Shown here one piece after another: positions 1-11,407 of a stretch of DNA of 11,407 bases. The notes beneath the pieces were generated by a model. That model was not told the DNA's origin, did not search any database, and worked only from the letters and a program-made list of their open reading frames with translations. Every line of letters begins with the position of its first letter. Position 1 is the first letter of the stretch. The stretch covers positions 1 through 11,407 of IMG/VR virus record IMGVR_UViG_3300020567_000318. The stretch is one strand, 5' to 3'. Both the position numbers and the translations under genes were made by a program.

Positions 1-405
1 CACCCGCTCCCCCTCCAGCAGAACCACGCCCCACGGGGACCTAGGCTTGGTCACAACTATTGTCACCACCCTCCTAGCCATCCTGTAGATGTCCCGGGGG
101 TCGTAGAGTAGGATGTCATCGCAGTTCAGCGCGTACACGTACTCCTCCGTGCACTCCTGGAGCGCCCTCCTCAGCGCCCCGCCAGTGCCCCACTCGGGCT
201 TCGACTCGATCCACTCCACGTCAAGCTCTGGCACCCTGAAGCCCCGGGTCAGCACTATGATCCTGTCGAAGCCGTGCTTTCGTAGCCAAGACACTTGATA
301 CTCAAGTAGCGTCATCCCGTTGTTCAATTCAACTAGAGGTTTGGGCACCCACACGTAGGGCTTCATCCTCCACGACTCACCACCCGCAAGGATGACCGCC
401 TCCAT
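1..405 (-). CDS. Sugar-1-phosphate nucleotidyltransferase (NTP_transferase family), runs off the left edge of the window
   Basis: Manual translation from ATG at 405 gives 135 open codons: MEAVILAGGESWRMKPYVWVPKPLVELNNGMTLLEYQVSWLRKHGFDRIIV...EWGTGGALRRAL...YALNCDDIL...PWGVV. It has the LAGGxxxR, PKPL, GTGGAL and NxD motifs of the family. Not in the supplied track because the stop codon lies outside the window. Confidence 0.9.
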   Translation of the reverse strand, partial: MEAVILAGGESWRMKPYVWVPKPLVELNNGMTLLEYQVSWLRKHGFDRIIVLTRGFRVPELDVEWIESKPEWGTGGALRRALQECTEEYVYALNCDDILLYDPRDIYRMARRVVTIVVTKPRSPWGVVLLEGERV

Positions 406-499: not shown

Positions 500-904
500 G
501 TGAGGGCCATGAACTGGAGGAGAATCAACGTGCCCGAAAACGTGTACCGGGAGATCGCACGCATCGCTAGCTCTCAGAAGACAGCCATGTGGAAGGTTTT
601 GGTGGAGATGGTCTCAACGTACCGTGCGGCTAGGCGCGACACGCAGAAGCGCCCGGTCTCTGACAAGGTGGCCTGGTACGTAACTAAGCTCGCCATGTCC
701 GCTGGCGAGTTCCGGGGCAACCCGGACCCGCAGAACAGGGACCTCCTCCTCCAGACCATCGAGCAGATAGAGAGCAGGCTGAAGGTGGACCTGAGCGAGC
801 TTAAGAGCGTGGTGAGGAGCTACGACGGTAGCGCTATGTCCAGGAAGGCGCTGAACGATACTGTGAAGCTAGCTGTCATGAAGATCATGGAGAGCGCTGA
901 GTAG
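500..904 (+). CDS. Putative DNA-binding protein with an N-terminal ribbon-helix-helix-like domain and a helical C-terminal domain (start GTG500 or ATG509)
   Basis: RRINVPENVYREIARIASSQKTAMWKVLVEMVSTY fits the beta-alpha-alpha RHH pattern. The gene has its own TATA box and a pyrimidine tract downstream. Confidence 0.6.
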   Translation: MRAMNWRRINVPENVYREIARIASSQKTAMWKVLVEMVSTYRAARRDTQKRPVSDKVAWYVTKLAMSAGEFRGNPDPQNRDLLLQTIEQIESRLKVDLSELKSVVRSYDGSAMSRKALNDTVKLAVMKIMESAE

Positions 905-922
905 GTCCCCCCACCTTTCTTT

Positions 923-1435
923 CTACTCTTCTTTCAACAGGTTCATCGATTTGGCCACCATCTCGCCCAGATCAATCAAATCGCGTTCCCACTCTTTCAT
1001 TACGAGCCTGAGTTGGGCCGCTAGGATGATGACAACTTTAGCCACCTCCTCTGGCAACTTGTATCTTATCGTAGCGACGCGTAGCATGAGCGATGCGAAG
1101 TCTGACCATAGCTCTAGTGGTATCTCATCTATCCTGTAGTACACCATCTCCGAGAAGAGGTATGTGGATAGGCGGCTTGAGTATGGAAGTGCGAAGTAAG
1201 ATATGACGGGTCTAAACACGTATTTCAGGAGGTTGAGGTTTATGTAATGCCTAAAGACCCTTGGAGGGAGGAGGCGCGGCCTCTCGTGCTTTATAGATGA
1301 GTAGCTCCTTACCGCGTTGATCACAGCGCGCGTTATGATCCTCTCCCAATTGATCGACTGTAGGATGGGCTTGATGGCATCTATGGATACCACTACATCC
1401 TCGTTTAAGGGCGCATCTCGCAACTTCTCGACCAC
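923..1435 (-). CDS. Hypothetical alpha-helical protein (170 aa), start uncertain
   Basis: Long ORF with protein-like composition. It is the last gene of the - strand cluster and converges on the 500..904 gene with an 18-nt gap. Confidence 0.7.
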   Translation of the reverse strand: MVEKLRDAPLNEDVVVSIDAIKPILQSINWERIITRAVINAVRSYSSIKHERPRLLPPRVFRHYINLNLLKYVFRPVISYFALPYSSRLSTYLFSEMVYYRIDEIPLELWSDFASLMLRVATIRYKLPEEVAKVVIILAAQLRLVMKEWERDLIDLGEMVAKSMNLLKEE

Positions 1436-1497: not shown

Positions 1498-1836
1498 CTA
1501 AAAACCCCTACTCGCCAAGCGCTTTGCCAACCTCCTTGCAAGCTCGTGCCTCAGCGCTCCCAGACTGATGGCGTGGACCTCGCGCTTGAACGCGTCCCTG
1601 ATCCTGCTTTCGACCTCCTCTGGAGGTATGCCCTTGCCCGCACCCGCTAACAAAGATTGAATCGATTCGATCGCTTGTTTGAGGTACGGCTCGGCCTCCT
1701 CCAACGTGGCTCTTCCGCTGGCCACTTCCTCAGCCAGATCTCTGAGCAACGAGTACGCCTCCAGCTTTTCCTTTACGAGCGTTGTGCCCCTGAACAGCTC
1801 GTTGAGAACGTCTATCAGCCTAGGTCCCGCCGCCAC
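1498..1836 (-). CDS. Hypothetical alpha-helical protein (about 112 aa)
   Basis: Same frame as track ORF 1498..1863. The start is reassigned to GTG1836, which follows the SD-like GGGGTGAGG. Amphipathic helices with a basic C-terminus. Confidence 0.7.
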   Translation of the reverse strand: MAAGPRLIDVLNELFRGTTLVKEKLEAYSLLRDLAEEVASGRATLEEAEPYLKQAIESIQSLLAGAGKGIPPEEVESRIRDAFKREVHAISLGALRHELARRLAKRLASRGF

Positions 1837-1969
1837 CCACCTCACCCCTCGCGACCCTCGCAAGAGCTATCAAGATCAGGTCCTGGAGCGTCGTGCCCCG
1901 CTCTTTCGCCCTCCTCTCCAAGATCTCCAAGATACGCTTGGGGACCTTGATCCTGATCTCCTCGCTCAT
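1820..1969 (-). CDS. Small ribbon-helix-helix (CopG/Arc-like) transcriptional regulator, 49 aa
   Basis: Manual translation: MSEEIRIKVPKRILEILERRAKERGTTLQDLILIALARVARGEVGGGGT*. Alternating beta strand (IRIKVP), helix, G-T-T turn, then a second helix. GAGGAGGAG lies directly upstream. Below the track length cut-off. Confidence 0.85.
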   Translation of the reverse strand: MSEEIRIKVPKRILEILERRAKERGTTLQDLILIALARVARGEVGGGGT

Positions 1970-2282
1970 ACTCCTCCTCGCTCTCCGCACCGCTACCACT
2001 TAAAATTTCCTCCTCCATCTTGGCGAGCCTCCTCCCCTTGCCGCTCTTATCGTAAGCGTACTTCCTCAGCCTCTTGATGGCACCCTCCTCGGCACACAAC
2101 AAGCGGAACGAGATCACAACAGTGACAGCGGGCGGCGTATCGGGTGGGGACACGGTCTCGGAGATATCGATCGCCGTGATCAAACCCTGTCTTTGTAGTC
2201 GGCGGGCTACGTAATTCGCGTAGTTGGCGACTTGGTGGGCAACCTTTCGTAAAATCAACACGTACTCGATTGACCCGTCCAT
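1842..2282 (-). CDS. Hypothetical protein (about 146 aa) with an acidic tail overlapping the RHH gene
   Basis: Same frame as track ORF 1842..2417. The start is reassigned to ATG2282 (MDGSIEYVLILRK), 23-28 nt downstream of a TTTAAG box. The longer start would cross the promoter region and overlap MCP1. Confidence 0.65.
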   Translation of the reverse strand: MDGSIEYVLILRKVAHQVANYANYVARRLQRQGLITAIDISETVSPPDTPPAVTVVISFRLLCAEEGAIKRLRKYAYDKSGKGRRLAKMEEEILSGSGAESEEEYERGDQDQGPQAYLGDLGEEGERAGHDAPGPDLDSSCEGREG

Positions 2283-2374: not shown

Positions 2375-2380
2375 TTATAT
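2375..2380 (+). promoter_or_regulatory. TATA box for the capsid genes
   Basis: TTATAT 25-30 nt upstream of ATG2405. No SD motif precedes the ATG, consistent with a leaderless mRNA. Confidence 0.6.
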
Positions 2381-2404: not shown

Positions 2405-2761
2405 ATGCCGATAACAAAGACGTTGCAGGACCGATTCGAGAAGTTCAGCGCGAAGACGCCCCCCGATGTCACCGGGGCTAGGTACGCCGCTAGCAAGGAG
2501 ATAGCGCTACCCAGGTTCCTGGAGGGGTCCAGCGCGATGGCCGTGATAGTGGAGCTGACTAGGAACATATTGGAAACGGCGGGCGTCCCCGCCGGGCAGC
2601 AGGGAGTTTACTACGGGTTCGCGCAGAGGGCCAGGAAGCTGGCATGGAGCCACAGCGGTGAAACGCTGGCCAAGTTCATCGAGGGGCTGAAGTCAGAGTA
2701 CGTCGCCAAGGGCTGCGACCCGGCCATCCTCGACAAGATCGCTGCGCTAGTAGTTGGTTAG
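2405..2761 (+). CDS. Major capsid protein 1, SIRV2-type (Adnaviria)
   Basis: The N-terminal DRFEKFSAK and the C-terminal ILETAGVPAGQQGVYYGFAQR...GETLAKFIEGLKSEYVAKGCDPAILDKIAALVVG follow the SIRV2 MCP pattern as recalled (QRYAKWQAKF ... YQGFG ... INGLKGYY ... NPQVLD). Clear paralogue of the next gene. Confidence 0.88.
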   Translation: MPITKTLQDRFEKFSAKTPPDVTGARYAASKEIALPRFLEGSSAMAVIVELTRNILETAGVPAGQQGVYYGFAQRARKLAWSHSGETLAKFIEGLKSEYVAKGCDPAILDKIAALVVG

Positions 2762-2775
2762 GGGTGGGATAGGGC

Positions 2776-3156
2776 ATGCCGATCGTTAAGTCCCGGGTAT
2801 CGGACCGGTACGCCAAGTACAACCTAAAGTACCCCGATGCCACCACGATGACTAGCAGGCTGACCGCGGTCAAGGAGATAATGGACCTGCGCTACCAGGC
2901 CGGCTCCTCCGTGATCTACAACGCCGTCGAGGCAACCAGGAACATCTTGGAGTCTAAGGGCGTCCCCGTCGGGCTCCATGGTGCCTACTATGCCTTTGCC
3001 CAAGAGCTGGTGCGGGCGACTTTTAGTCATAGTGGCGCCACCCTCAATGCGATTATCAGCGGTCTAAAGCAGAAGTATGTGACCGCGCACGGCCTGGATG
3101 CGACTATCCTGGACGAGATAGTCAAGACCGTGGTTGGCGTCCTCCCGCCCTACTAG
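2776..3156 (+). CDS. Major capsid protein 2, SIRV2-type (Adnaviria)
   Basis: DRYAKYNLKY...TRNILESKGVPVGLHGAYYAFAQ...SHSGATLNAIISGLKQKYVTAHGLDATILDEIVKTVVG aligns end to end with MCP1. SD-like GGGGTG in the 14-nt spacer. Confidence 0.88.
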   Translation: MPIVKSRVSDRYAKYNLKYPDATTMTSRLTAVKEIMDLRYQAGSSVIYNAVEATRNILESKGVPVGLHGAYYAFAQELVRATFSHSGATLNAIISGLKQKYVTAHGLDATILDEIVKTVVGVLPPY

Positions 3157-3207
3157 CGGGGGTACGGGCGGGGGGAGGGACGCGGCGTAAAAATCATCTA
3201 TTTTTTT
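3137..3207 (+). terminator. Probable terminator region after the capsid genes: GC-rich imperfect hairpin/G-tracts followed by T7
   Basis: GCGTCCTCCCGCCCTAC (3137-3153) can pair, with bulges, with GTACGGGCGGGGGGAGGGACGC (3162-3183). A T7 run lies at 3201-3207. Confidence 0.45.
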
Positions 3208-3223
3208 GCACCATGCTTGACAC

Positions 3224-4267
3224 GTGAGGGTAGCCATCTGCACATCCGATAGATCCGTATCGCTACAGATTGTCGCTAGGGATGTAGCAGAGGTCCTGAG
3301 GTCCCGGGGCCACCTGGTGGACGTCCACCTCTTCGCATTGACAGACCCCAGCATCTACAAGAGGTACGACTCGTGGTTGACGGTCATGACGTTTGACGTG
3401 GTCTGGGCGACCCCGTACTTCTTTGTCGCAAGGTCCGCGAAGGTGCGCGGCCTGCGCTCGCTGTTTTACGCAACTATCGAAGGTAAGGTCTGGGGGCTGT
3501 GGATGCGCGAGTGGATAGTCCGAGACCTGGAGTTTATCGCGTGTAGCAATTACGTCAAGAGGAAGATTGCCGAGGTGGGTGGCAAGGTTGTAGCGGTGGT
3601 GTACCACGGCATAAAGCCAGAGGAGTACGAGGCGGCCAGGACCCTGGGAGCCTCGTTGAGGCGCAGGCTAGGGTTCACGGACAAGGACTTCGTGGTGGCA
3701 TACGTTGCAGCGGACTACCCGAGAAAAGGACATGATCTATTCGCAGAGGTCTGTAGGATCGTGGCGCAGAGGGACCCCAGCATCAAGTTCATCATCGCCA
3801 CTAAGGATGATGCGATCTCACACTACGCTGGGTGCAACAACGTCGTAGCGCTTGACTGGTTCGGGAAGGTCCCCCGCACGGACATTCTAGCGGTCTATGG
3901 GGCGTGCGACCTCTACGCCCAGGCCAGCCTAGCTGAGGGCTTCGGCTTGCCAGTGCTGGAGGCGCTAGCGAGTGGTAAGCCCGTTGTGCACGCGGACTAC
4001 GAACCGCTGAGCGAGATAACGACGCCAGAGACATCCTTCCGCGTCCCCGTCAGGGCGGTCATCGACTACAGAGACACGGGCCCCACAATGGGTGGCATCA
4101 TGTACGAGCACCACATCTACGACCCCTCCGAGTTCGCAGACGTCATCATCCAGGCCAAGGAGGAGGTGGTGTGCAGGAGGGGGGAGCTGGAGGAACTCTG
4201 CAAGCAGAGAGCTAAGGAGTTTGACGCTAGGAAGACCTACTCGGCGTTCGAGGTGCTCTTGCAATGA
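3224..4267 (+). CDS. Glycosyltransferase, GT-B fold, family 4 (Glycos_transf_1)
   Basis: VVYHGI, PRKGHD and the EX7E motif EGFGLPVLEALASGKPVV. Such enzymes are common in rudiviruses and lipothrixviruses. Confidence 0.93.
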   Translation: MRVAICTSDRSVSLQIVARDVAEVLRSRGHLVDVHLFALTDPSIYKRYDSWLTVMTFDVVWATPYFFVARSAKVRGLRSLFYATIEGKVWGLWMREWIVRDLEFIACSNYVKRKIAEVGGKVVAVVYHGIKPEEYEAARTLGASLRRRLGFTDKDFVVAYVAADYPRKGHDLFAEVCRIVAQRDPSIKFIIATKDDAISHYAGCNNVVALDWFGKVPRTDILAVYGACDLYAQASLAEGFGLPVLEALASGKPVVHADYEPLSEITTPETSFRVPVRAVIDYRDTGPTMGGIMYEHHIYDPSEFADVIIQAKEEVVCRRGELEELCKQRAKEFDARKTYSAFEVLLQ

Positions 4268-4268
4268 T

Positions 4269-4277
4269 TTTTTAAGC
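4269..4277 (+). promoter_or_regulatory. T-run/TATA box (possible combined terminator and promoter)
   Basis: TTTTTTAAG directly after the glycosyltransferase stop and 23-31 nt upstream of ATG4300. Confidence 0.55.
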
Positions 4278-4299
4278 GCAAGGCTCTTCCATCCTCCCG

Positions 4300-4656
4300 A
4301 TGGCGCAGGGCGAAGCTAGGAAAAGGTCTAAAAGGGCGGAGCGCAGGGTGGAGGGCGTGGGAGAGACAACGCCAGCTCCTGCGGTAGCCCCTACGGCCAC
4401 CCCCACGGCCACCCCTGAGGTGGCTCAACCGCAACGGAGGGAGCTTACTGAGGAGGAGAAGGAATTCATGAACGCGCTGGCGCAGCTGGTGGAGTCAGCC
4501 CAGGAGCTGTCCTATGCTCTGGCTGTCGTGGATGAGACACGAGATGAGCTGTCGCCAGAGATAAAGGAGGTGCTAGCGACAGCTAGAGCTGTGGTGAGGG
4601 CGGTCTGGAGGTTCCACAGGCTGGTGAGGAAGAGGGCTGGCACCAGGGTGCCATGA
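4300..4656 (+). CDS. Hypothetical protein: basic N-terminus, Pro/Thr/Ala linker, helical C-terminal domain
   Basis: Own TATA-like box, codon usage like its neighbours, and an ATGA overlap with the next gene. Confidence 0.75.
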   Translation: MAQGEARKRSKRAERRVEGVGETTPAPAVAPTATPTATPEVAQPQRRELTEEEKEFMNALAQLVESAQELSYALAVVDETRDELSPEIKEVLATARAVVRAVWRFHRLVRKRAGTRVP

Positions 4657-4943
4657 GCGCGGTTCTGCCAGCCAAGCCGCTCGATGTAGTCATCCCCCCC
4701 GTCGCCATCGACGTGGAGGGGGCCAAAGTCATCATCCTGGAGGTCATCAGGTACACGCGCTTCGATGGTGCCACCCGCTTCCTAGTTTCCTGCCAGGTGG
4801 AGTGCCAGGGCTGGCTGTCGCCCCAGTTCAGGCTTGACGTGAAGGATGAGAGGGACCTCATCAACCAGCTACGGGTCGAAGTGTCGAAGATGCAGCTTCT
4901 GTTGATGTCTGGCTTCACTCGGATCTTCCAGCGCGCTCAATAG
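4653..4943 (+). CDS. Small hypothetical viral protein (beta-rich N-terminal part, C-terminal helix)
   Basis: Translationally coupled by an ATGA overlap and followed by a T7 tract. Contains LDVKDERDLINQLRVEVSK. Confidence 0.75.
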   Translation: MSAVLPAKPLDVVIPPVAIDVEGAKVIILEVIRYTRFDGATRFLVSCQVECQGWLSPQFRLDVKDERDLINQLRVEVSKMQLLLMSGFTRIFQRAQ

Positions 4944-4951
4944 GACTCTAG

Positions 4952-4958
4952 TTTTTTT
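4952..4958 (+). terminator. Oligo-T terminator candidate
   Basis: T7 run 8 nt after the stop at 4943. Confidence 0.45.
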
Positions 4959-4992
4959 CTGACTACATCGCGCATCCAAGTGCGGTATAGGC

Positions 4993-7900
4993 ATGGAGGG
5001 GATGGACTGGGATGCGATCACGCCAGAGGATGCGCAGTACATCATCTCGATGCTCGACAGACTAAGAGATGTCGAGATCGGCTCAACGATACCAACCATC
5101 AGCATCGGTGAGCTGGACCTCGATGCGCTCGCCAGCTCTCTGGCTGGCATCACTGACCCCATAGGCCAGATTCAGAGCTGGTTCCAGGACCAACTGAGGG
5201 CTCTCACGTCGTGGTTCAGCAGCGCGGTCGACAGCCTGTTCCGATCGCTCTACAACACGCTCATCAAGCCAACATTGAGCGCAATAGCTGGTGGCGTCGA
5301 CTGGATCAGGAGCAACCTTCAGTCGATCGCGAGCACCGTAACATCATCGCTGGGCCAGATCGCCACGCTCGTGAGCAACCTGGGGTCCTCCATCGCTTCC
5401 ATATTGAGCGCGATAGCGCAACTTCCCTCCGCGATATGGAACCAGTTGCAGAGCGTATCCAGCGCGATAATCAGCAGCCTGTCCAGCGCCATCGCGTCCG
5501 TGGTCGCGAAGGTTTCGGATGCGCTGGGCGGGCTTAGGAGCTGGCTCTCCAGTGCGCTCTCCAACGTGATCAGCGGCATCGCGGGCCTGGCATCTACCAT
5601 ATCCGGAGCCATATCTCAGATAACGGGCGCGATTTCGAGTGCAATGGACGCGGTGGTGAAGGCGATAACGCAAATACCTGGCGTTGTGTCCGCCCTCATA
5701 TCAAGGCTACAGGAGTGGATAGGGGGGGCGTTCGCGGGGTTGCAGAAGTGGGTGGGAGAGAGGCTGGAGGGCATACTTGACGCGCTGGGCAGGGCGCTCG
5801 CGACGCTGTCTGACGCTCTGAGGGGCTTGCAGTCGTGGCTAGCCGCCACCTTGGCCGGTGTCGTATCCGGGTTGCGGGACCTGCTGTCCAGCTCTTTATC
5901 TGCAATCGGTAACTGGATAGCCGAGGCCACGAAGCGCTTGCAGGACATCGGGTACGTGTTCCAGGGGTTCGTGAACGCCATACTGAGGGTACCGGAGATG
6001 CTGGGGAGCATACTGGCCAACATATTCAAGCCAGTGGTGGACTTCCTGGGTTCTATAGCTCAGGCGATACTGAACTTCTTTGCCGATCCCGTTGGTACGC
6101 TACGAAGGGCGTTCGAGTGGCTGGCGAAACAGATCTGGGACCTGCTACCTAGCTGGCTCAAGGATGCGATTATCGCGTTGCAGAACGCCTGGAACAGCTT
6201 TGTTCAAGGGCTACAGGACTTCCTAAGGGATCCCTTGGGCTTCATCCAGCGTGGCTTCAGCTGGCTGGCGGAGCAAATCTGGAAGCTGTTACCAGATTGG
6301 CTCAAGGGAGCGATCGTTGCAATACAGAACGCTTGGAACACATTCGTTCAAGGGCTCCAGGACTTCATCAAGGACCCCATAGGCTTCATACGCGCGAGGT
6401 TTGAGGAGCTGGCGAAATGGATCTGGGAGCACCTGCCAGAGCCAGCGAAACAACTCATAGAGAAGATCCGCGATTGGATTTTGGGCGCGTGGGACTTCCT
6501 GTACAAGCTGTTCACCAAGTACCTGCCAGAGGCGATAGGGTGGGCGTGGAACGAGTTGCAGAGGTTCATAGCCAACCCGCTGAACTACATATGGGAAAAG
6601 CTACTGGGGCTGTGGGAGTGGATATCCAAGCAGCTCGCAGGCGTGTGGAACGTGCTAAGGGGCGCCTGGGACTGGTTCGTGGGGGCGTTGCGTGGCGCGT
6701 GGGACTGGCTCGTGTCAGCTGTCAGCGCGATCCCGCAGGTGATACTCACATCTCTGCGCGTGCTGGGAGAGACGGTCTTGAACCTGGCCAAGAGCGTTGG
6801 TGAGGCGCTCGCTGGCGTGTTCGGCGCTATCGTGAGGGAGGTGGCGAAGCCCTTCCAGCCACTGGTCGAGGTCGTTGGGCAGTACATGATGCAGGTGCTG
6901 GGGCCACTGGCGCCCAAAGAGCGGGCGCCACTCTTCGTGGACACCATGGTACGCTCGGGCACGGCGCTGATGGTGACGTCGCTCTACGCAGCTGGCATAG
7001 CGACCATACCGCTCATGCTCACGAAGGCAACTAAGGCTGGCGGTCACGCCGTCAAGTCGCTCCTGGAGCGGATCGGCATAGACCTGGACGGCCACCTGCA
7101 ACTCCTGATGGACGTTGGCCTAAGTGGGACTAAGGTTGGCGGGAGGGGAGGGGGTGGCGCCAGGTTCAGCATATCATCGAAGTTGGTGTCAGCGCTGGGG
7201 GAGGCGATAAACGAGCTTGGAGACGCCTTCGACAAGTACGCATCGAGCATACTACAATATGCGGTTCTCTGGACCACGGAGCCCCTGGGCTCGGCCATAG
7301 GCCGCTACTCAGCATACTTCATACGCGACCTCATCCCGGTTGAGCTACCGGGGCTCGATCAGCTGGTGGATTTCGCCAGGAGGGTCAAGGGGGTAGATAA
7401 GCCAGAGGAGTACCTGAAGGCGCTCAACTACTACGTGTCGCTTTACGGCTACTCGACGTATTTCGTGGAGCAGGTATTCGGCTTCACGCTGAATGAGGAG
7501 AAGATACCGGTCATAGAGATCCGCGACAGGTTCTACGATGTGAGCAGGGCGGTGAGGAAGGTCCCCATAGCGCTCATCTACGAGCTACCGAGCGCGTCTG
7601 ATGTGGCCGCGATGATGGTGCGCGACATCTTCTACTCGTACGATGACTTCATCAAGCTGGCGAGGGCCAGGGGCATGCCAGAGGACATCGCTGCGCTCTA
7701 CTACATCTACAGGTTCAAGTACCCGTCACCCGAGCAGCTCTTCGAGTTCTACTGGCGCGGTGTGTCTGGCGTCCTCTGGTACGCACCCAGGCAGCTGATG
7801 ACCGATGAGGAGAGGTCCACGCTGCTGGAGAGGCTGAAGGTGGGTGCCGAGCCCAGGCCACCGGCGGCGCTGAACTTCGACATCTCAACGCTCTCTGACA

Positions 7901-9909
7901 TGATAGGAACCTACATGAAGTGGCACGACCTGTTCCCAGCAGCTTGGGAGGCTGGCTTCACGAGCGACAGGGCGATAGTCATGGACCTAGCGGCGGAGAT
8001 GCCCGATAAGATAGATGTGCGCTGGATGCTCCGCTACGCAATCTTCGAGCTACTGGCAAGCAAGGGCATAACGCGCGAGACGCCCGTACCGCAGCTGAGG
8101 AACGTGCTGGAGGACGCGGCAACGAACAAGGAGGTCCTCATGGACCTGTCGATGGTGTGCAGGTTGCTACAGGCCCGGGGCCTGCACCCATACTTCGTGC
8201 CGTTCATAGCTGTCGCGGACACGCTAGCTGCGCTGGCGGATGAGCGCACGCTAGTGCGCTCGGGCTTCATAAACCTCTACGAGCGGGGCGCCCTGGACGT
8301 GAAGACGCTCGACAAGCTGCTCTCCAACCTAGTTGTAGCGTCGTTCAAGGTGTCATACTTCGACATAGAGCGGGGCACGTGGGTCGACAACAAGTACGTG
8401 AACGTCCCGGTGGCCTACCTGCCAGCAGAGCGCAAGCTGATAGAGTTGCGCGCACTGCTCGACAAGTTCGAGAGGCCATGGCGCGAGGTGTGGAGCGACC
8501 TGGAGACCGCGTACAGGGAGTACATCTTGGACGCAAGCTCAGCCATGATGGCCGCAACGGCGGTCGCCAAGGCGATCAATGAGTTGCTACCAGAGGAGTC
8601 CAAGGCGCTAGTGGGCACGGAGTACAAGCTCACCGTTGATGAGGACTACCTGAAGACACTGCTAAAGTCGTGGGAGGTTGCTAGAGAGGTCTACACGATA
8701 CGGAGGATTAGGTCCTGGGTCTACCGTGTTTTGGGCTGGCTGATATACAGAGTGGCTTACGGGTACGTTAGGCCCAGCGACCTGGACTCCCTAGCCAGCA
8801 CATTATCTGAGGTAGCCAGGCTACCGCAAGCGGAGAGGGAGGCGATCGCTACAATCACCAAGGCGGTGTGGCGGATCGCAACGAGGGAGTACATACCCAC
8901 GCCATCGCAGCTGGCCACGATAGCCGAGGTCGTGCCAGCCGCGCTCAAGTACGTGGATGACGTGCTGGAGGCTCTGAACGTGCCAGAGGAGTGGAGGCCA
9001 ATATGGAGGTCCTACATCACAGTGAAGCCAATAGCGGATGAGGTGAGGACGCTGGTGAGCTACTACTACCGCGCGAAGAGGTACGGCGTAACGTTGCCGG
9101 ATGATGTGGTCAAGGCCGTCGAGGCGCTCATGAGCGAGGTGGGGTACACGGACAGGGAGAAGGCGATACTGGACCTCGCGGCGTACATATACAACGTAAC
9201 GGAGGAGATGAGAAAGGAGGCGAGCGAGGTCATACCGTCGCTCTCCATGCTGGCATCGATGGCGGAGTACATCGACGTCCCGCTCGACTACGTGGCGAAG
9301 GTCATGGCAGCGAGGCGGGTCGAGAGGACGTACGCTGAGCTGTGGCTGAAGTACGTGTCAGCGAGAACGATAGCGAGCGAGGTCAACCGCGTCTCAAACA
9401 CGCTACGTAGCCTGTACGAGCACTTCGCTGTGCCCGATGACGTGGTCAAGGCGGTTGCGGATCTGATGAAACGGGGCGGGTGGACATCGAGGGAGCTTGC
9501 GATATTCCAGTTCGACCTGGAGCTGAGGAGGAGGTACCGCATCCTCAACACGCTGGTGCCAACCCTGCGGCAGTTTGTCACAGATGCCCTGTACTTAGGC
9601 GAGTGGGAGAGGCTACTGGAGGACTGGCTAGCAGCGAGAGGCATCGAAGCCGAAAAGTACAAGCAACAAGTAGAGTACTACAAGAAGCTGATAAAGTCCC
9701 GCAAGCTCAACAGGCGCCTGTCCTGGTTCATCGCGCGCCTGATGAACGCGTACTGCGCTGGCATCATTACCTTGGATGAAGCGAGAAAGCGACTGGAGCA
9801 GTTCAAGGACTACGGCTTGGATGATGATGAGATAAAGATCCTCCTTGCTGGCTTCGAGCTGGAGAGGGCGTACAGGCAAGCAGTGTACGGCAGAGGGGGA
9901 GGCGCGTAG
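4993..9909 (+). CDS. Very large minor structural protein (1638 aa): tape-measure-like amphipathic N-terminal part and helical repeat C-terminal part, candidate terminal/tail structure component
   Basis: Uninterrupted ORF. The first ~630 aa are amphipathic Ala/Ser/Ile/Trp helices, and a P-[ST]-x-x-[QDM]-[LV] motif recurs in the C-terminal part. Size and position resemble the large minor virion proteins of Ligamenvirales (for example SIRV2 P1070). The function is inferred. Confidence 0.75.
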   Translation: MEGMDWDAITPEDAQYIISMLDRLRDVEIGSTIPTISIGELDLDALASSLAGITDPIGQIQSWFQDQLRALTSWFSSAVDSLFRSLYNTLIKPTLSAIAGGVDWIRSNLQSIASTVTSSLGQIATLVSNLGSSIASILSAIAQLPSAIWNQLQSVSSAIISSLSSAIASVVAKVSDALGGLRSWLSSALSNVISGIAGLASTISGAISQITGAISSAMDAVVKAITQIPGVVSALISRLQEWIGGAFAGLQKWVGERLEGILDALGRALATLSDALRGLQSWLAATLAGVVSGLRDLLSSSLSAIGNWIAEATKRLQDIGYVFQGFVNAILRVPEMLGSILANIFKPVVDFLGSIAQAILNFFADPVGTLRRAFEWLAKQIWDLLPSWLKDAIIALQNAWNSFVQGLQDFLRDPLGFIQRGFSWLAEQIWKLLPDWLKGAIVAIQNAWNTFVQGLQDFIKDPIGFIRARFEELAKWIWEHLPEPAKQLIEKIRDWILGAWDFLYKLFTKYLPEAIGWAWNELQRFIANPLNYIWEKLLGLWEWISKQLAGVWNVLRGAWDWFVGALRGAWDWLVSAVSAIPQVILTSLRVLGETVLNLAKSVGEALAGVFGAIVREVAKPFQPLVEVVGQYMMQVLGPLAPKERAPLFVDTMVRSGTALMVTSLYAAGIATIPLMLTKATKAGGHAVKSLLERIGIDLDGHLQLLMDVGLSGTKVGGRGGGGARFSISSKLVSALGEAINELGDAFDKYASSILQYAVLWTTEPLGSAIGRYSAYFIRDLIPVELPGLDQLVDFARRVKGVDKPEEYLKALNYYVSLYGYSTYFVEQVFGFTLNEEKIPVIEIRDRFYDVSRAVRKVPIALIYELPSASDVAAMMVRDIFYSYDDFIKLARARGMPEDIAALYYIYRFKYPSPEQLFEFYWRGVSGVLWYAPRQLMTDEERSTLLERLKVGAEPRPPAALNFDISTLSDMIGTYMKWHDLFPAAWEAGFTSDRAIVMDLAAEMPDKIDVRWMLRYAIFELLASKGITRETPVPQLRNVLEDAATNKEVLMDLSMVCRLLQARGLHPYFVPFIAVADTLAALADERTLVRSGFINLYERGALDVKTLDKLLSNLVVASFKVSYFDIERGTWVDNKYVNVPVAYLPAERKLIELRALLDKFERPWREVWSDLETAYREYILDASSAMMAATAVAKAINELLPEESKALVGTEYKLTVDEDYLKTLLKSWEVAREVYTIRRIRSWVYRVLGWLIYRVAYGYVRPSDLDSLASTLSEVARLPQAEREAIATITKAVWRIATREYIPTPSQLATIAEVVPAALKYVDDVLEALNVPEEWRPIWRSYITVKPIADEVRTLVSYYYRAKRYGVTLPDDVVKAVEALMSEVGYTDREKAILDLAAYIYNVTEEMRKEASEVIPSLSMLASMAEYIDVPLDYVAKVMAARRVERTYAELWLKYVSARTIASEVNRVSNTLRSLYEHFAVPDDVVKAVADLMKRGGWTSRELAIFQFDLELRRRYRILNTLVPTLRQFVTDALYLGEWERLLEDWLAARGIEAEKYKQQVEYYKKLIKSRKLNRRLSWFIARLMNAYCAGIITLDEARKRLEQFKDYGLDDDEIKILLAGFELERAYRQAVYGRGGGA
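6076..6450 (+). repeat. In-frame tandem repeat, 144 bp (48 aa) unit, about 2.6 copies
   Basis: Units start at 6076, 6220 and 6364: FFADPVGTLRRAFEWLAKQIWDLLPSWLKDAIIALQNAWNSFVQGLQD / FLRDPLGFIQRGFSWLAEQIWKLLPDWLKGAIVAIQNAWNTFVQGLQD / FIKDPIGFIRARFEELAKWIWEHLPE. Confidence 0.9.
8890..9890 (+). repeat. Three degenerate ~110-aa protein repeats
   Basis: Units start YIPTPSQL (8890), VIPSLSML (9229) and LVPTLRQF (9553). PDDVVKAV recurs exactly at 9097 and 9433, 336 bp apart. Confidence 0.75.
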
Positions 9910-9922
9910 GTCCACTCTACTC

Positions 9923-9929
9923 TTTTTAA
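9923..9929 (+). promoter_or_regulatory. T-run/TATA-like box (possible combined terminator and promoter)
   Basis: TTTTTAA 13 nt after the large gene's stop and about 33-39 nt upstream of ATG9962. Confidence 0.45.
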
Positions 9930-9961
9930 CTGATCTCTAGATGGATGGAGTGGGTAGGGAT

Positions 9962-10189
9962 ATGGCCAGAAGGCCCCCCTCCGCCGCAACCAAAACGTCC
10001 CCGGGCAGGTCCCCTACTGGCATGAGCAGCCCCGATGAGGAGCTTAAGAGCGCCATCCAGCAACTTCAGGATGCAATCAAGAAGTTCCAGGAGGACGTGG
10101 AGAAGGCCAGGAAGGTGCTAGAGGCGGAGTTCGCGAAGTGGAGCGCGCCCCAGGCATCGCCCCAGGCATCCAAGCAGGCGTCTAAGTAG
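9962..10189 (+). CDS. Small coiled-coil protein (start could be 9941, 9962 or 10022)
   Basis: Heptad pattern LKSAIQQLQDAIKKFQEDVEKARKVLE with low-complexity ends. Its stop is 3 nt before the next ATG. Confidence 0.7.
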   Translation: MARRPPSAATKTSPGRSPTGMSSPDEELKSAIQQLQDAIKKFQEDVEKARKVLEAEFAKWSAPQASPQASKQASK

Positions 10190-10192
10190 GCT

Positions 10193-11407
10193 ATGGGCTA
10201 CGCACAAAGAGAGGTAGCAAAGGTAGTAGAGCAGAAGCTGAAGTATTGGCTGAAGACGCAGAGCGAGGACGCGATAGACGCGATGTTCGACCGCATGTTC
10301 GACACCTACGATCGCCTCTCGTTCTGGGGGGACTGGGTGCTCTCGGACACACTCTTCTCATCCCTCATCTCGCTGGCGTTCTTCGACTTGCCAATACCGG
10401 AGATCGTGCCGTGGAGCCTGGTGTGGGAGGTGGAGTTGCCATCTATCGATGAGTTCCTCGCTGGCGTCCTCATCAAGCTGGAGCCCATCGACGTGACGGC
10501 GGTCTTCCCCGAGCTATCGGAGGTCCTCAGCTCCCTCAAGCTCCTCCTGACCAGCGAGTACGCACAGAACATACAGGAAACCAGGGTTAGGAAGCTGATT
10601 GTTGGCGAGAGCTACTACGGTGATAGCTACGTGGACCCGCCAGCGGTCAGGGAGTTCCTGCGCTCGACGCTCTACGCGTTCACGAAGAAAGACCTGACGT
10701 GGCAGGCGGTAAGGGATAGGTTGCGCGTGGCCGCGAAGACGTGGAACGTCCACGAGAGGCTCGTTGAGGACGCGTTCAACAGGCTCTCGATGATATCGGC
10801 AGTAAAGGAGCGGGCGCTGACGTGGGACTACGGCTGGTGGGACCGTAGCTATTGGGCGGAGGAGGGCAGCGGTGGCGAGGTCGCTTTCATCAATTACGAG
10901 GGTCAGGAGGTCAAGGCGGAGTACGAGCACCTAGCGGATCCGCAGTTTGGAGGTTACTGGGACATGAGCTACTGGGACATGTTCTACTGGGCCGCGCCCG
11001 AATCCCCGTACAAGCCAGCGGTTGGCCTTGAGGACCCAACCGTATCGAAGGTGCGCGACTTCGTAGTGCAGAACTTCAGGAGCAGGATACACGTAACACC
11101 ACTAGCTGTGGCTAACTACCAGACAGCGGAGGGCAGGACATCGTGGAGCGAGTCGCCACGCACGGAGACCTACGCAATTCCCTTGTCCATGCGGTACAGG
11201 ATCGAGTCGCTGGTCGACAGCATGGTCAAGCAGCTGAAGCCCGATGTTGGCGTCTTCCAGCTCAGGTTGTACAAAACTGCCGTGCTGGACCTGTTCGGCT
11301 CGCTTTACTCCCCCCACAGGTGGGGGGAGGAGGCCCTGCGCGCGTCATCCAAGGAGGAGCTGAGGAGCTTCTGGATCGAGAAGTGGAAGGCTCAGGGCCT
11401 GGATGAA
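10193..11407 (+). CDS. Probable minor virion protein with aromatic repeats and a C-terminal MCP-like segment, runs off the right edge of the window
   Basis: Manual translation gives 405 codons with no stop: MGYAQREVAKVVEQKLKYWLKTQSEDAIDAMFDRMFD...GESYYGDSYVDPPAVREFLRST...WDYGWWDRSYW...GGYWDMSYWDMFYW...FWIEKWKAQGLDE. Not in the track. It follows the giant gene, as the ~560-aa structural gene does in rudiviruses (recalled). Confidence 0.85.
   Translation, partial: MGYAQREVAKVVEQKLKYWLKTQSEDAIDAMFDRMFDTYDRLSFWGDWVLSDTLFSSLISLAFFDLPIPEIVPWSLVWEVELPSIDEFLAGVLIKLEPIDVTAVFPELSEVLSSLKLLLTSEYAQNIQETRVRKLIVGESYYGDSYVDPPAVREFLRSTLYAFTKKDLTWQAVRDRLRVAAKTWNVHERLVEDAFNRLSMISAVKERALTWDYGWWDRSYWAEEGSGGEVAFINYEGQEVKAEYEHLADPQFGGYWDMSYWDMFYWAAPESPYKPAVGLEDPTVSKVRDFVVQNFRSRIHVTPLAVANYQTAEGRTSWSESPRTETYAIPLSMRYRIESLVDSMVKQLKPDVGVFQLRLYKTAVLDLFGSLYSPHRWGEEALRASSKEELRSFWIEKWKAQGLDE

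What the first reader, a model, noticed from the sequence alone, without database searches (positions are those of the whole stretch)
2405..11407. Virion module of a probably undescribed high-GC filamentous archaeal virus (Adnaviria)
Seen: two SIRV2-like capsid genes, a GT4 enzyme, a giant repeat protein and a downstream aromatic-repeat protein in one + strand block, in GC-rich DNA. Established: SIRV2-fold MCPs define Adnaviria and wrap dsDNA in A-form, and cultured rudiviruses and lipothrixviruses of Sulfolobales are AT-rich. Inference: this virus infects a different, higher-GC host (Thermofilales, Thermoproteales, Desulfurococcales or Bathyarchaeia type) and may be a new genus or family.
Basis: partly seen in the sequence, partly recalled or inferred. 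Interest (0 to 1): 0.85.

Follow-up and report, generated by a model that had tools for sequence, protein, structure and literature searches.

The report
Virion genes of uncultivated rod-shaped archaeal virus
This 11.4 kb hot-spring contig is a fragment of an uncultivated rod-shaped archaeal virus related to rudiviruses; it carries two adjacent, co-evolving capsid genes and belongs to a widespread lineage that I could not find named, a useful but not startling addition to a known kind of virus.

Summary
Window 2405-11407 (+ strand, 58% GC) encodes two paralogous SIRV2-type capsid proteins, a GT4 glycosyltransferase, two small conserved proteins, a 1638-aa repeat protein, a small coiled-coil protein and a truncated Trp/Tyr-rich protein.

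- **Capsid fold:** Pfam, a PDB profile search and AlphaFold+Foldseek all place the capsid proteins in the SIRV2 fold, closest to rudivirus capsid proteins.
- **Rudivirus homologs:** the glycosyltransferase, the giant protein and (weakly) the last protein match SIRV2 ORF335, ORF1070 and ORF488.
- **Clade:** the same gene order recurs in at least 20 metagenomic or MAG contigs from New Zealand, China and Guaymas Basin.
- **Duplication:** the two capsid paralogs stem from one old duplication, evolve congruently and are under purifying selection. A heterodimeric capsomer is likely.
- **Novelty:** no classified virus is close (25-28% capsid identity to Rudiviridae). Gene order differs from Chiyouviridae and from the preprint family "Demeterviridae".
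- **GC and host:** high GC is not a clade trait (35-60%; a relative with 84% identical capsid protein has 45% GC). Host evidence is indirect: 59%-GC relatives are mostly binned in Thermofilaceae MAGs.

Verdict: a new member, possibly a new family, of a known kind.

The parts
2405..2761 (+). MCP1, SIRV2-fold major capsid protein paralog (118 aa)
   Evidence: PF12193 at E 2e-10. 49% identical to MCP2. MCP1 orthologs form one clade (99/98) across 9 genomes. dN/dS 0.04-0.07 where computable. The N-terminal 45 residues carry 7 K/R.
2776..3156 (+). MCP2, SIRV2-fold major capsid protein paralog (126 aa)
   Evidence: PF12193 at E 2e-12. Profile hits 6wq0 at 1.6e-16 and 3j9x at 1.4e-15. AF2 pLDDT 79.6 with Foldseek top hits 3j9x, 6wq0 and 3fbz, and 3f2e at TMt 0.88, rmsd 1.7. 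tblastn finds only Rudiviridae MCPs, at 25-28% identity.
2375..2380 (+). TATA-like box (TTATAT) about 27 nt upstream of the MCP1 ATG, in the 122-nt divergent intergenic region 2283-2404
   Evidence: Read from the sequence. Its role as an archaeal promoter for a leaderless MCP transcript is inferred, not tested.
3224..4267 (+). GT4 (GT-B) glycosyltransferase, ortholog of SIRV2 ORF335
   Evidence: PF00534 at E 9e-21 and phrog_2170 at E 2.5e-34. 30% identity over the full length to SIRV2 ORF335, E 4e-37. E-x7-E motif at residues 238-246.
4300..4656 (+). p118, small basic protein with an Ala/Pro/Thr-rich N-terminus; conserved in the clade, function unknown
   Evidence: Orthologs sit at the same position in all tandem-MCP loci. 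No family hit. pI 9.3.
4653..4943 (+). p96, small conserved protein always directly upstream of the giant gene; function unknown
   Evidence: Alignment A5 of 14 orthologs includes Chiyouvirus-type loci L018 and L081. It occupies the position of Chiyouvirus_17, which is annotated 'Acr'. No match to SIRV2 ORF114 or to PDB.
4993..9909 (+). Giant repeat protein (1638 aa), homolog of SIRV2 P1070 (terminal-fibre / minor structural protein)
   Evidence: BLASTP to SIRV2 ORF1070 aligns both the N-terminal repeats and the C-terminal region (E 1e-10). phrog_7334 at E 2.5e-30 on residues 1298-1515, plus tape-measure-like N-terminal hits. Internal repeats. Hydrophobic segments at 154-172, 573-591 and 658-677.
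6118..6389 (+). Tandem 144-nt (48-aa) repeat inside the giant gene
   Evidence: Direct repeat D1, 128 nt at 77% identity and 144-nt spacing. The protein copies 381-440 and 429-499 are 56% identical.
9941..10189 (+). p82, small basic coiled-coil protein between the giant and the P488-like gene
   Evidence: Weak coiled-coil family hits only. An ortholog is detected in L003, and small genes occupy the same slot in other loci.
10193..11407 (+). Trp/Tyr-rich protein truncated by the contig end (about 441 aa in relatives); probable homolog of the SIRV2 P488 minor structural protein
   Evidence: hhalign of A2 against SIRV2 ORF488 gives probability 75%, E 2.5e-5, over 200 columns. phrog_7238 at E 1.4e-3 for the L003 ortholog. 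No match to ORF564. [quoted passage not shown] 14.3% aromatic.
1842..2282 (-). Conserved upstream gene, divergent from MCP1 (context, outside the finding)
   Evidence: tblastn with the L003 117-aa gene gives 68% identity at window 2267-1929.
1820..1969 (-). Ribbon-helix-helix DNA-binding protein (49 aa) (context)
   Evidence: Translation. Weak CopG hit. 60% identical to the L003 48-aa gene. RHH_1 genes lie at equivalent places in relatives.
1498..1863 (-). Conserved 121-aa protein, function unknown (context)
   Evidence: Orthologs in L002 and L003 at 56-57% identity.
923..1435 (-). Conserved 170-aa protein, function unknown (context)
   Evidence: Orthologs in L002 and L003.
500..904 (+). Conserved 134-aa basic protein, function unknown (context)
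   Evidence: Orthologs across the clade and in single-MCP relatives.
1..405 (-). Sugar-nucleotide nucleotidyltransferase, truncated by the contig start (context)
   Evidence: PF12804 at E 2.8e-17 and PF00483. Homologs at 51-81% identity, all on contigs of 47 kb or less.

Best explanation
The window is an 11.4 kb fragment, broken inside genes at both ends, of the linear dsDNA genome of an uncultivated rod-shaped or filamentous archaeal virus. The virus belongs to the realm Adnaviria and is rudivirus-like (Ligamenvirales-type). The contig comes from hot-spring sediment at Orakei Korako, New Zealand.

The + strand block 2405-11407 is its virion module.
- Two tandem paralogous SIRV2-fold capsid proteins most likely assemble as MCP1/MCP2 heterodimers. 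Their basic N-terminal helices would wrap the genome in A-form and coil it into a helical nucleoprotein rod.
- A GT4 glycosyltransferase (ORF335-type) probably glycosylates virion or host surface components. It would be fed by virus-encoded sugar-nucleotide enzymes.
- A 1638-aa P1070-type repeat protein and a P488-type Trp-rich protein would build the terminal structures that bind the host.
- Three small conserved proteins (p118, p96, p82) are likely assembly or minor virion factors.

Shown: the folds and homologies, the conserved synteny, a single old MCP duplication, and purifying selection on both paralogs.

Inferred: heterodimer formation (my estimate about 0.6), A-form wrapping, the glycosylation targets, the terminal-fibre role, and a host in Thermofilaceae or another non-Sulfolobales Thermoproteota lineage.
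For: - **MCP family and fold:**
- **Closest cultured relatives** are Rudiviridae MCPs at 25-28% identity.
- **Rudivirus homologs:** GT = SIRV2 ORF335, giant = SIRV2 ORF1070, last gene ~ SIRV2 ORF488.
- **Conserved gene order:** MCP1-MCP2-GT-p118-p96-giant-(small)-~440 aa recurs in at least 20 contigs from several continents and from Guaymas Basin.
- **MCP tree:** MCP1 clade 99/98 and MCP2 clade 99/93, joined at 100/98. The two have the same internal groupings and are separate from Rudiviridae and from a large single-MCP environmental clade.
- **Selection:** dN 0.12-0.28 with saturated dS, and dN/dS of 0.14 or less for both paralogs.
- **Both paralogs look competent:** both keep the full basic N-terminal arm.
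- **Contrast with MRV1:** the second coat paralog of MRV1 is a very long branch (2.46) lying outside this clade.
- **Realm definition:** per the ICTV profile PMC12282232.
- **Viral context:** contigs of relatives are 45 kb or less and hold virus-like genes only, including Hjc, RHH, STIV_B116-like and a helicase.
Against: - No virion, proteome or structure exists for any member, so incorporation of both MCPs is unproven.
- In the one cultured precedent for adjacent MCP genes (Hoswirudivirus MRV1), the second paralog is reported not to be in virions (PMC10848311).
- Terminal inverted repeats were not found at the ends of the 35,497-bp relative contig.
- The window has no termini of its own.
- The P488 homology is weak (hhalign probability 75%), and the AF2 model of that protein was poor (pLDDT 50).
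- Host evidence is MAG binning of a subclade only 57% identical in MCP2, with some obvious mis-binning into Thermosphaera and Thermotogae MAGs.
Confidence: 0.8

Rival explanations
1. The virus is rudivirus-like, but only one MCP paralog (probably MCP2, next to the GT) builds a homodimeric, non-enveloped rigid rod. MCP1 would be non-structural or regulatory, as reported for the second coat paralog of Hoswirudivirus MRV1.
For: - MRV1 has adjacent coat genes gp09 and gp10 next to a GT.
- Duan et al. state that the second rudiviral paralog is not incorporated into virions.
- The Caldarchaeales preprint raises the same possibility for its adjacent-MCP viruses.
- By sequence, the window's MCPs are closer to rudiviral than to lipothrixviral MCPs.
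Against: - MCP1 is retained in every clade genome.
- It evolves at about the same rate as MCP2 and with a congruent topology, under dN/dS of 0.07 or less.
- It keeps the full DNA-binding N-terminal arm.
- MRV1 gp09 is shorter (108 vs 134 aa) and extremely divergent (branch 2.46), and it arose from an independent duplication.
Confidence: 0.3
2. The contig is not a new family. It is a divergent member of an already named lineage: Chiyouviridae (ICTV 2025), or the preprint families Gaiaviridae or Demeterviridae, with a Bathyarchaeia or Caldarchaeales host.
For: - Chiyouvirus shares the core genes: a 124-aa MCP, GT4, a ~437-aa minor structural protein, a small gene and a P1070-like giant.
- The preprint describes two adjacent MCP copies next to a GT in Caldarchaeales-associated rod viruses.
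- A Gaiaviridae contig (IMGVR_UViG_3300020567_000363) comes from the window's own sample.
- Relatives carry methyltransferase and ArsR/MarR-type genes, like those highlighted for Demeterviridae.
Against: - Chiyouvirus has one rudivirus-type MCP followed by GT and the 437-aa gene, plus a distant 249-aa second MCP. That is a different order.
- Demeterviridae vOTU_0037 has a divergently oriented 219-aa MCP, then a 125-aa MCP, GT and a 439-aa gene.
- The Chiyouvirus-type locus L081 is only 25-35% identical to the window in core proteins.
- The tandem clade is a separate, fully supported branch of the MCP tree.
- Neither the window nor 17 clade contig ids occur in the stored supplements.
- MCP- and GT-pattern scans of IMG/VR did not retrieve the named exemplar contigs.
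- I could not obtain the exemplar sequences, so there was no direct comparison.
Confidence: 0.25
3. The block is a cellular or integrated element (provirus remnant or plasmid) of a high-GC archaeon rather than part of a free lytic virus genome.
For: Relatives are deposited inside MAGs of Thermofilaceae and others. No ITRs were found at the ends of one 35.5 kb contig.
Against: - All carrying contigs are 45 kb or less.
- They hold no ribosomal, tRNA or housekeeping genes in the stretches read.
- The same ~35-41 kb contig recurs as a separate contig in many MAGs, including bacterial ones, which is typical of binned free viral DNA.
- No integrase was seen.
Confidence: 0.03

Closest known systems
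Rudiviridae (SIRV2, SSRV1; Ligamenvirales)
   Same: - SIRV2-fold MCP, with the best sequence and fold matches.
- ORF335-type GT next to the MCP, a P1070-type giant protein and a probable P488-type protein.
- RHH regulators and an Hjc-like resolvase in relatives.
   Different: - Two conserved, co-evolving MCP paralogs instead of one.
- 25-28% MCP identity and a separate MCP clade.
- 58% GC against 25-47% in cultured rudiviruses.
- No detectable ORF564 homolog.
- Found in neutral hot springs and marine hydrothermal sediment, with MAG association to Thermofilaceae rather than Sulfolobales.
Hoswirudivirus MRV1 (Rudiviridae with two adjacent coat genes)
   Same: Two coat-protein genes side by side, upstream of a GT.
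   Different: - MRV1 gp09 is truncated (108 aa) and extremely divergent.
- Its duplication is independent of the one here.
- It is reported as not incorporated into virions.
- Here both copies are full length and equally conserved.
Chiyouviridae (Wargodvirus xiongnu, PP467602; Bathyarchaeia, hot spring)
   Same: - A rudivirus-like backbone in a non-Sulfolobales, neutral hot-spring setting.
- The same core genes: a 124-aa MCP, GT4, a ~437-aa minor structural protein, a small gene directly upstream of a P1070-like giant, and two MCP-fold proteins in total.
   Different: - Chiyouvirus order is MCP-GT-437aa-small-giant, with a second, 249-aa MCP about 11 kb away.
- Here the MCPs are a tandem pair, and the ~440-aa gene follows the giant.
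- The Chiyouvirus-type locus L081 shares only 25-35% identity.
- The exemplar sequence itself was not available for comparison.
"Demeterviridae" and "Gaiaviridae" (bioRxiv 10.1101/2025.08.23.671958; Caldarchaeales-associated rod viruses)
   Same: - Uncultivated hot-spring and hydrothermal adnaviruses with several SIRV2-like MCP genes next to a GT.
- One Gaiaviridae contig comes from the same New Zealand metagenome.
   Different: - The Demeterviridae layout is a 219-aa MCP on the opposite strand, then a 125-aa MCP, GT and a 439-aa gene.
- The window and its clade contigs are not listed in the stored supplements.
- Hosts there were assigned by Caldarchaeales spacers, whereas relatives here are binned with Thermofilaceae.
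Lipothrixviridae, Ungulaviridae and Tristromaviridae (heterodimeric, enveloped adnaviruses)
   Same: Two paralogous MCPs, the condition that gives heterodimeric capsomers in these families. AFV1 MCPs are detectable fold and sequence relatives.
   Different: - Much weaker similarity: AFV1 at E 7e-6, and SIFV and PFV2 not significant, against 1e-16 for rudiviruses.
- The paralogs here are 49% identical and duplicated within a rudivirus-like lineage.
- No envelope-related or multi-pass membrane proteins lie in the window.

Membership tests
Adnaviria (realm) | Major capsid protein with the SIRV2-type alpha-helical fold | tested here: met
   PF12193 above cut-off for both MCPs. Profile hits to 6wq0 and 3j9x at E 1e-16 and 1e-15. 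The AF2 model's only significant Foldseek hits are SIRV2, SSRV1 and AFV1 MCPs.
Adnaviria (realm) | MCP dimers wrap linear dsDNA in A-form into a helical filament | not testable with these tools
   Needs virions and cryo-EM. The only indirect support is the conserved basic N-terminal arms.
Adnaviria (realm) | Linear dsDNA genome with terminal inverted repeats | tested here: inconclusive
   The window is an internal fragment. The two ends of the 35,497-bp relative contig share no inverted repeat, and one end lies inside a gene, so that contig is probably incomplete. The two ends of the 44,957-bp relative could not be fully read.
Rudiviridae | Single MCP forming homodimeric capsomers | tested here: not met
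   Two full-length MCP paralogs are conserved in all clade members examined that span the MCP region, and both are under purifying selection. Capsomer composition itself was not testable.
Rudiviridae | MCP groups with Rudiviridae MCPs | tested here: not met
   Rudiviridae form their own clade (100/99). The window's MCPs lie in a separate clade (100/98) with 25-28% identity.
Rudiviridae | Conserved structural and GT genes (ORF335 GT, P1070, P488, P564) | tested here: inconclusive
   ORF335 and P1070 homologs are clear. P488 is weak (probability 75%). P564 was not detected in the window or in the protein tested. The rest of the genome is not in the window.
Chiyouviridae | Genome architecture of the exemplar: MCP-GT4-437aa-small-giant, with a second 249-aa MCP distant | tested here: not met
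   The published gene table differs from the window's order MCP1-MCP2-GT-p118-p96-giant-p82-~440aa.
Chiyouviridae | Proteome-level similarity to exemplar PP467602 | not tested
   The record is not in the searchable collections and was not retrieved by three IMG/VR scans. The proxy locus L081, which has the Chiyouvirus-type order, is 25-35% identical.
Lipothrixviridae / Ungulaviridae / Tristromaviridae | Two MCP paralogs orthologous to those families' MCP1 and MCP2; enveloped flexible virion | tested here: not met
   The paralogs arose by a duplication inside the rudivirus-like lineage. Similarity to AFV1 is far weaker than to rudiviruses, and similarity to SIFV and PFV2 is not significant. Envelope status is not testable.
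"Gaiaviridae" / "Demeterviridae" (preprint) | Listed vOTU membership; Caldarchaeales CRISPR spacer match; Demeterviridae MCP-region layout | tested here: not met
   Window and clade contig ids are absent from the stored supplements, which were cut when stored. The Demeterviridae layout differs. The Gaiaviridae layout and the spacers could not be examined.
GT4 glycosyltransferases (GT-B, retaining) | Glycos_transf_1 C-terminal domain with the E-x7-E motif | tested here: met
   PF00534 at E 9e-21 and PF13692. EGFGLPVLE at residues 238-246, with these positions invariant or nearly so across 13 orthologs.

The most novel reading that the evidence does not exclude
The window represents a family-level, so far unnamed lineage of Ligamenvirales-like viruses. 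It is widespread in neutral hot springs and marine hydrothermal sediments. In this reading a heterodimeric capsomer arose independently, by tandem duplication of a rudivirus-type MCP, giving a living intermediate between homodimeric rudiviruses and the heterodimeric enveloped families. Its hosts would include Thermofilaceae, an archaeal family for which my searches found no paper linking it to Adnaviria, Ligamenvirales or Rudiviridae.
Probability: 0.4. Interest if true: 0.6.

Novelty: new member of a known kind. Interest (0 to 1): 0.45.

Why it matters
Adnaviria is defined by one capsid fold. How homodimeric (rudivirus) and heterodimeric (all other families) capsomers relate is an open evolutionary question.

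This clade offers a recent, clean case: two 49%-identical tandem paralogs, both constrained, on an otherwise rudivirus-like backbone. It would let one test by structure prediction, proteomics or cryo-EM whether heterodimers evolve repeatedly.

It also extends the realm beyond its classified hosts (Sulfolobales, Thermoproteales, Bathyarchaeia, ANME-1), probably to Thermofilaceae. It shows that genome GC within one virus lineage can swing from 35 to 60%, which warns against reading host taxonomy from GC alone.

For annotation, it gives names to the 'hypothetical proteins' of many MAG contigs that are in fact viral.

Tried and rejected
- **AF2 of the ~441-aa P488-like protein** (alignment A2, 9 sequences) gave pLDDT 50. 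The model was too poor to search, so I made no fold claim. The A2 profile also has no PDB sequence hit and no relation to the MCP profile. I therefore could not reproduce the preprint's HHpred link of the 439-aa protein to AFV1 ORF140.
- **Fetching Chiyouvirus (PP467602 / IMGVR_UViG_3300022544_000008):** it is not in the phage collection. Scans with MCP patterns and a GT pattern did not retrieve it. It is not identifiable among the top 120 of 338 MCP homologs. The supplement holds no spacer sequences.
- **ITR search:** no inverted repeat between the ends of JAVYKL010000016.1. For the Guaymas contig, the first 896 bases could not be fetched, and no similarity was found between the available ends.
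- **Host via closest cellular homologs of the nucleotidyltransferase:** all hits sit on short, probably viral contigs, so there is no host signal beyond MAG names.
- **GTDB representative genomes:** only three Guaymas MAG contigs, two of them in a Thermotogae bin and so mis-binned.
- **p96 against SIRV2 ORF114 and PDB:** no relation.
- **Downstream protein against SIRV2 ORF564:** no relation.
- **tRNA and Rfam scans:** empty.
- **Considered and rejected:** a tape-measure protein of a tailed virus for the giant ORF. Many PHROG tape-measure hits occur, but they cover only the low-complexity Ser/Ala/Leu N-terminal repeats, whereas the specific C-terminal match and the synteny point to P1070.

Full report
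**What the window is**

The window is identical to the whole IMG/VR contig IMGVR_UViG_3300020567_000318 (11,407 bp). [quoted passage not shown] The contig is 58.4% GC, and every gene has GC3 of about 0.8. It breaks inside a gene at each end: a nucleotidyltransferase at 1-405 on the minus strand, and the last ORF from 10193 on the plus strand. It is therefore a genome fragment. It holds no tRNA and no Rfam family.

**Observation check**

The + strand block 2405-11407 holds eight ORFs:

| Gene | Coordinates | Length |
|---|---|---|
| MCP1 | 2405-2761 | 118 aa |
| MCP2 | 2776-3156 | 126 aa |
| Glycosyltransferase | 3224-4267 | 347 aa |
| p118 | 4300-4656 | 118 aa |
| p96 | 4653-4943 | 96 aa |
| Giant ORF | 4993-9909 | 1638 aa |
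| p82 | 9941-10189 | 82 aa |
| Last ORF | 10193 to the end | truncated |

- Both MCPs exceed the Pfam cut-off for PF12193 (Sulfolobus virus coat protein). The GT hits PF00534 and PF13692.
- The giant protein is truly repetitive. Many N-terminal repeats lie between residues 40 and 615, including a 48-aa tandem unit that is visible in the DNA at 6118-6389. A ~113-aa repeat lies near the C-terminus.
- The last protein is 14% aromatic with 18 Trp and has short W/Y-D motifs, but no statistically supported internal repeat.

**Capsid proteins**

- MCP1 and MCP2 are 49% identical.
- A profile of MCP2 and 20 database homologs matches the capsid chains of SSRV1 (6wq0, E 1.6e-16) and SIRV2 (3j9x, 1.4e-15). 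It matches AFV1 more weakly (5w7g and 3fbz, about 1e-5).
- The AlphaFold model of MCP2 (pLDDT 79.6, six helices) finds SIRV2 and SSRV1 as its only hits at E of 0.001 or better.
- The next best hits are AFV1 ORF140, the SIRV coat C-terminal domain (TM 0.88, rmsd 1.7 Å) and AFV1 ORF132. SIFV and PFV2 appear far down the list without significance.
- tblastn against GenBank phage and archaeal-virus records finds only Rudiviridae MCPs, at 25-28% identity. The whole window has no nucleotide match there.
The fold is there.

**Other module genes**

- The GT is 30% identical over its full length to SIRV2 ORF335 (E 4e-37). It keeps the E-x7-E motif.
- The giant protein aligns with SIRV2 ORF1070 in both its N-terminal repeat region and its C-terminal region. 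It matches phrog_7334 at E 2.5e-30. The many 'tape measure' PHROG hits cover only the low-complexity N-terminus.
- The last protein shows no relation to SIRV2 ORF564. Its family profile aligns with SIRV2 ORF488 over 200 columns (hhalign probability 75%, E 2.5e-5), and phrog_7238 gives weak support.
- The AlphaFold model of this protein was too poor to use.
- p118, p96 and p82 have no family assignment.

**Relatives and synteny**

Protein and pattern searches retrieved at least 20 contigs with the same order: MCP1-MCP2-GT-p118-p96-giant-(small)-~440 aa.

- They come from New Zealand springs (including two more contigs from the window's own sample), the Jinze spring in China, other geothermal samples and Guaymas Basin sediments.
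- They also include contigs of 21-41 kb deposited in NCBI MAGs.
- In two contigs the MCP pair is inverted relative to the GT.
- The closest long relative is a 44,957-bp Guaymas contig with 84% MCP2 identity.
- A second, much larger set of environmental contigs has a single 124-aa MCP (338 database proteins at E of 1e-5 or better). One of them (L081) has the Chiyouvirus-type order MCP-GT-438aa-91aa-giant.

**Phylogeny and selection**

- In a maximum-likelihood MCP tree, all MCP1 sequences form one clade (99/98) and all MCP2 sequences form another (99/93).
- The two clades are sisters (100/98) and share the same internal groupings.
- The pair is separate from Rudiviridae (100/99) and from the single-MCP environmental clade (96/94).
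- This indicates one duplication at the base of the clade, followed by co-inheritance.
- The second coat paralog of Hoswirudivirus MRV1 (gp09, 108 aa) is a very long branch outside this clade, so that duplication is independent.
- Between clade members, synonymous sites are saturated while dN is 0.12-0.28. dN/dS is 0.04-0.14 where it can be computed, for both paralogs.
- Both paralogs keep the basic N-terminal arm, with 7-8 K/R in the first 45 residues.
- These facts favour two functional structural subunits, and hence a heterodimer like that of all adnavirus families other than Rudiviridae. The MRV1 precedent, where the second paralog is reportedly absent from virions, keeps the alternative alive.

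**GC and host**

- Cultured rudivirus loci read here are 25-47% GC, so the window is indeed higher.
- GC is not a trait of the clade, however. Members range from 35 to 60%.
- Contigs from the same sample are 37% and 47.5% GC.
- The 84%-identical Guaymas relative is 45-50% GC, with MCP GC3 of 0.46 against 0.80 in the window.
- The only host lead is MAG binning. The MCP2 cluster that is 57% identical to the window's, on 59%-GC contigs, is recorded in several NCBI MAGs: five locus-tag series named 'Thermofilaceae archaeon', one 'Thermofilum sp.' and one 'Thermosphaera sp.'.
- Guaymas relatives sit in a 'Thermoprotei archaeon' bin and, wrongly, in a 'Thermotogae' bin.
- Homologs of the viral nucleotidyltransferase are all on short contigs and add only the names Thermoprotei, Thermofilum and Thaumarchaeota.
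- A non-Sulfolobales Thermoproteota host, probably Thermofilaceae, is therefore plausible but unproven for the window.

**Comparison with the literature**

- The ICTV 2025 profile lists six families with hosts in Sulfolobales, Thermoproteales, Bathyarchaeales and Syntropharchaeia.
- Chiyouviridae (Bathyarchaeia; Jinze spring) shares the rudivirus-like core. It has one rudivirus-type MCP and a distant 249-aa one, and the ~437-aa gene directly follows the GT.
- A December 2025 preprint proposes Caldarchaeales-associated 'Demeterviridae' and 'Gaiaviridae' with adjacent MCP copies next to a GT.
- The Demeterviridae layout differs from the window's.
- Neither the window nor 17 clade contigs occur in that preprint's stored supplements, although a Gaiaviridae contig from the same metagenome does.
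- Four literature searches combining Adnaviria, Ligamenvirales or Rudiviridae with Thermofil* found nothing.
- I could not obtain the Chiyouvirus, Gaiaviridae or Demeterviridae sequences. Family-level novelty is therefore likely but not demonstrated.

**Mechanism (shown versus inferred)**

- Shown: the homologies, the fold, the synteny, the duplication history and the selective constraint.
- Inferred from established adnavirus biology: MCP dimers wrap A-form DNA into a helical rod, and minor proteins such as P1070 form terminal structures for host binding.
- Inferred from gene content: GT-mediated glycosylation fed by virus-encoded sugar-nucleotide enzymes. These are the nucleotidyltransferase in the window, a phosphomannomutase-type enzyme in the Guaymas relative and an epimerase in the Thermofilaceae-binned relatives.
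- A TATA-like TTATAT lies about 27 nt upstream of the MCP1 start codon, in a 122-nt divergent intergenic region. This suggests a leaderless capsid transcript (inference).

**Verdict**

The finding is real and correctly interpreted. It is a new member, possibly representing a new family, of a known kind of virus. It is of moderate interest, mainly for the independent origin of a two-MCP capsomer and for a probable new host family.

Noticed in passing
L027:6131-9390 (= L028:13649-16908), JGI 3300005099 Ga0072682_123122: The closest long relative (44,957 bp, Guaymas Basin) carries a five-gene cluster with precomputed Pfam hits Csf1 and Csf3, a RAMP (Cas7/Csf2-like) protein and a PAPS-reductase (CysH-like) protein. 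[quoted passage not shown] I did not look for a CRISPR array.
   Followed up: partly
L026:10889-13135: In the same relative, a 748-aa gene downstream of the virion module is a GT4 glycosyltransferase interrupted by LAGLIDADG_3 domains. It looks like an intein or homing-endonuclease insertion in a viral GT.
   Followed up: partly
window 2405-3156 versus L003:6020-6771: Relatives with 74-84% identical capsid proteins differ greatly in synonymous composition: GC3 0.80 in the window against 0.46 in L003. Clade genomes span 35-60% GC. This is a large compositional swing within one virus lineage.
   Followed up: yes
L076 and L077 (IMGVR_UViG_3300020567_000043 and _000106): Two further tandem-MCP contigs from the window's own metagenome, at 37% and 47.5% GC. 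Several members of the clade therefore coexist in one spring.
   Followed up: partly
window 4653-4943; L081:8591-8866; L018:13142-13456: p96 is conserved directly upstream of (or overlapping) the giant gene in both the tandem-MCP clade and Chiyouvirus-type loci. The gene in this position in Chiyouvirus (gene 17) was predicted to be an anti-CRISPR. Its strict synteny with the fibre gene suggests a structural or chaperone role instead.
   Followed up: partly
L003:8562-14304: In the Guaymas relative, the giant gene is split into 644-aa and 1202-aa genes, with a 94-aa ORF in another frame bridging them. This could be a frameshift, an assembly error or a genuine split.
   Followed up: no
window 1-405 (-); L003:982-2331 and 3373-4020; L007:5561-6562: Clade genomes carry sugar-nucleotide genes next to their glycosyltransferases: a nucleotidyltransferase, a PGM/PMM-type mutase and an NAD-dependent epimerase/dehydratase. 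This suggests the virus supplies its own activated sugars.
   Followed up: partly
L078:4152-4901 and L079:8222-8988: In two clade members the MCP1-MCP2 pair lies on the opposite strand from the GT and giant genes. The pair is kept together while the module is rearranged.
   Followed up: no
L022, L023 (QNAP01000186.1, QNAP01000147.1): Two fragments of a tandem-MCP virus are deposited in a 'Thermotogae bacterium' MAG from Guaymas Basin. This is an evident binning error, and a warning for host inference from bins.
   Followed up: no
L143:1-5000 and L145:1-5000 (JAVYKL010000016.1, 35,497 bp): The two ends of this MAG contig share no inverted repeat. One end is inside a gene and the other is AT-rich non-coding DNA. 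Sister assemblies of 36.4-40.8 kb exist, so the true genome is probably longer than 35.5 kb.
   Followed up: yes
(P0034-P0153): Public metagenomes hold a very large radiation of single 124-aa rudivirus-like MCPs: 338 clusters at E of 1e-5 or better, on contigs up to 50 kb, some binned as Archaeoglobales or 'archaeon YNP-WB-062'. Most appear unclassified.
   Followed up: no
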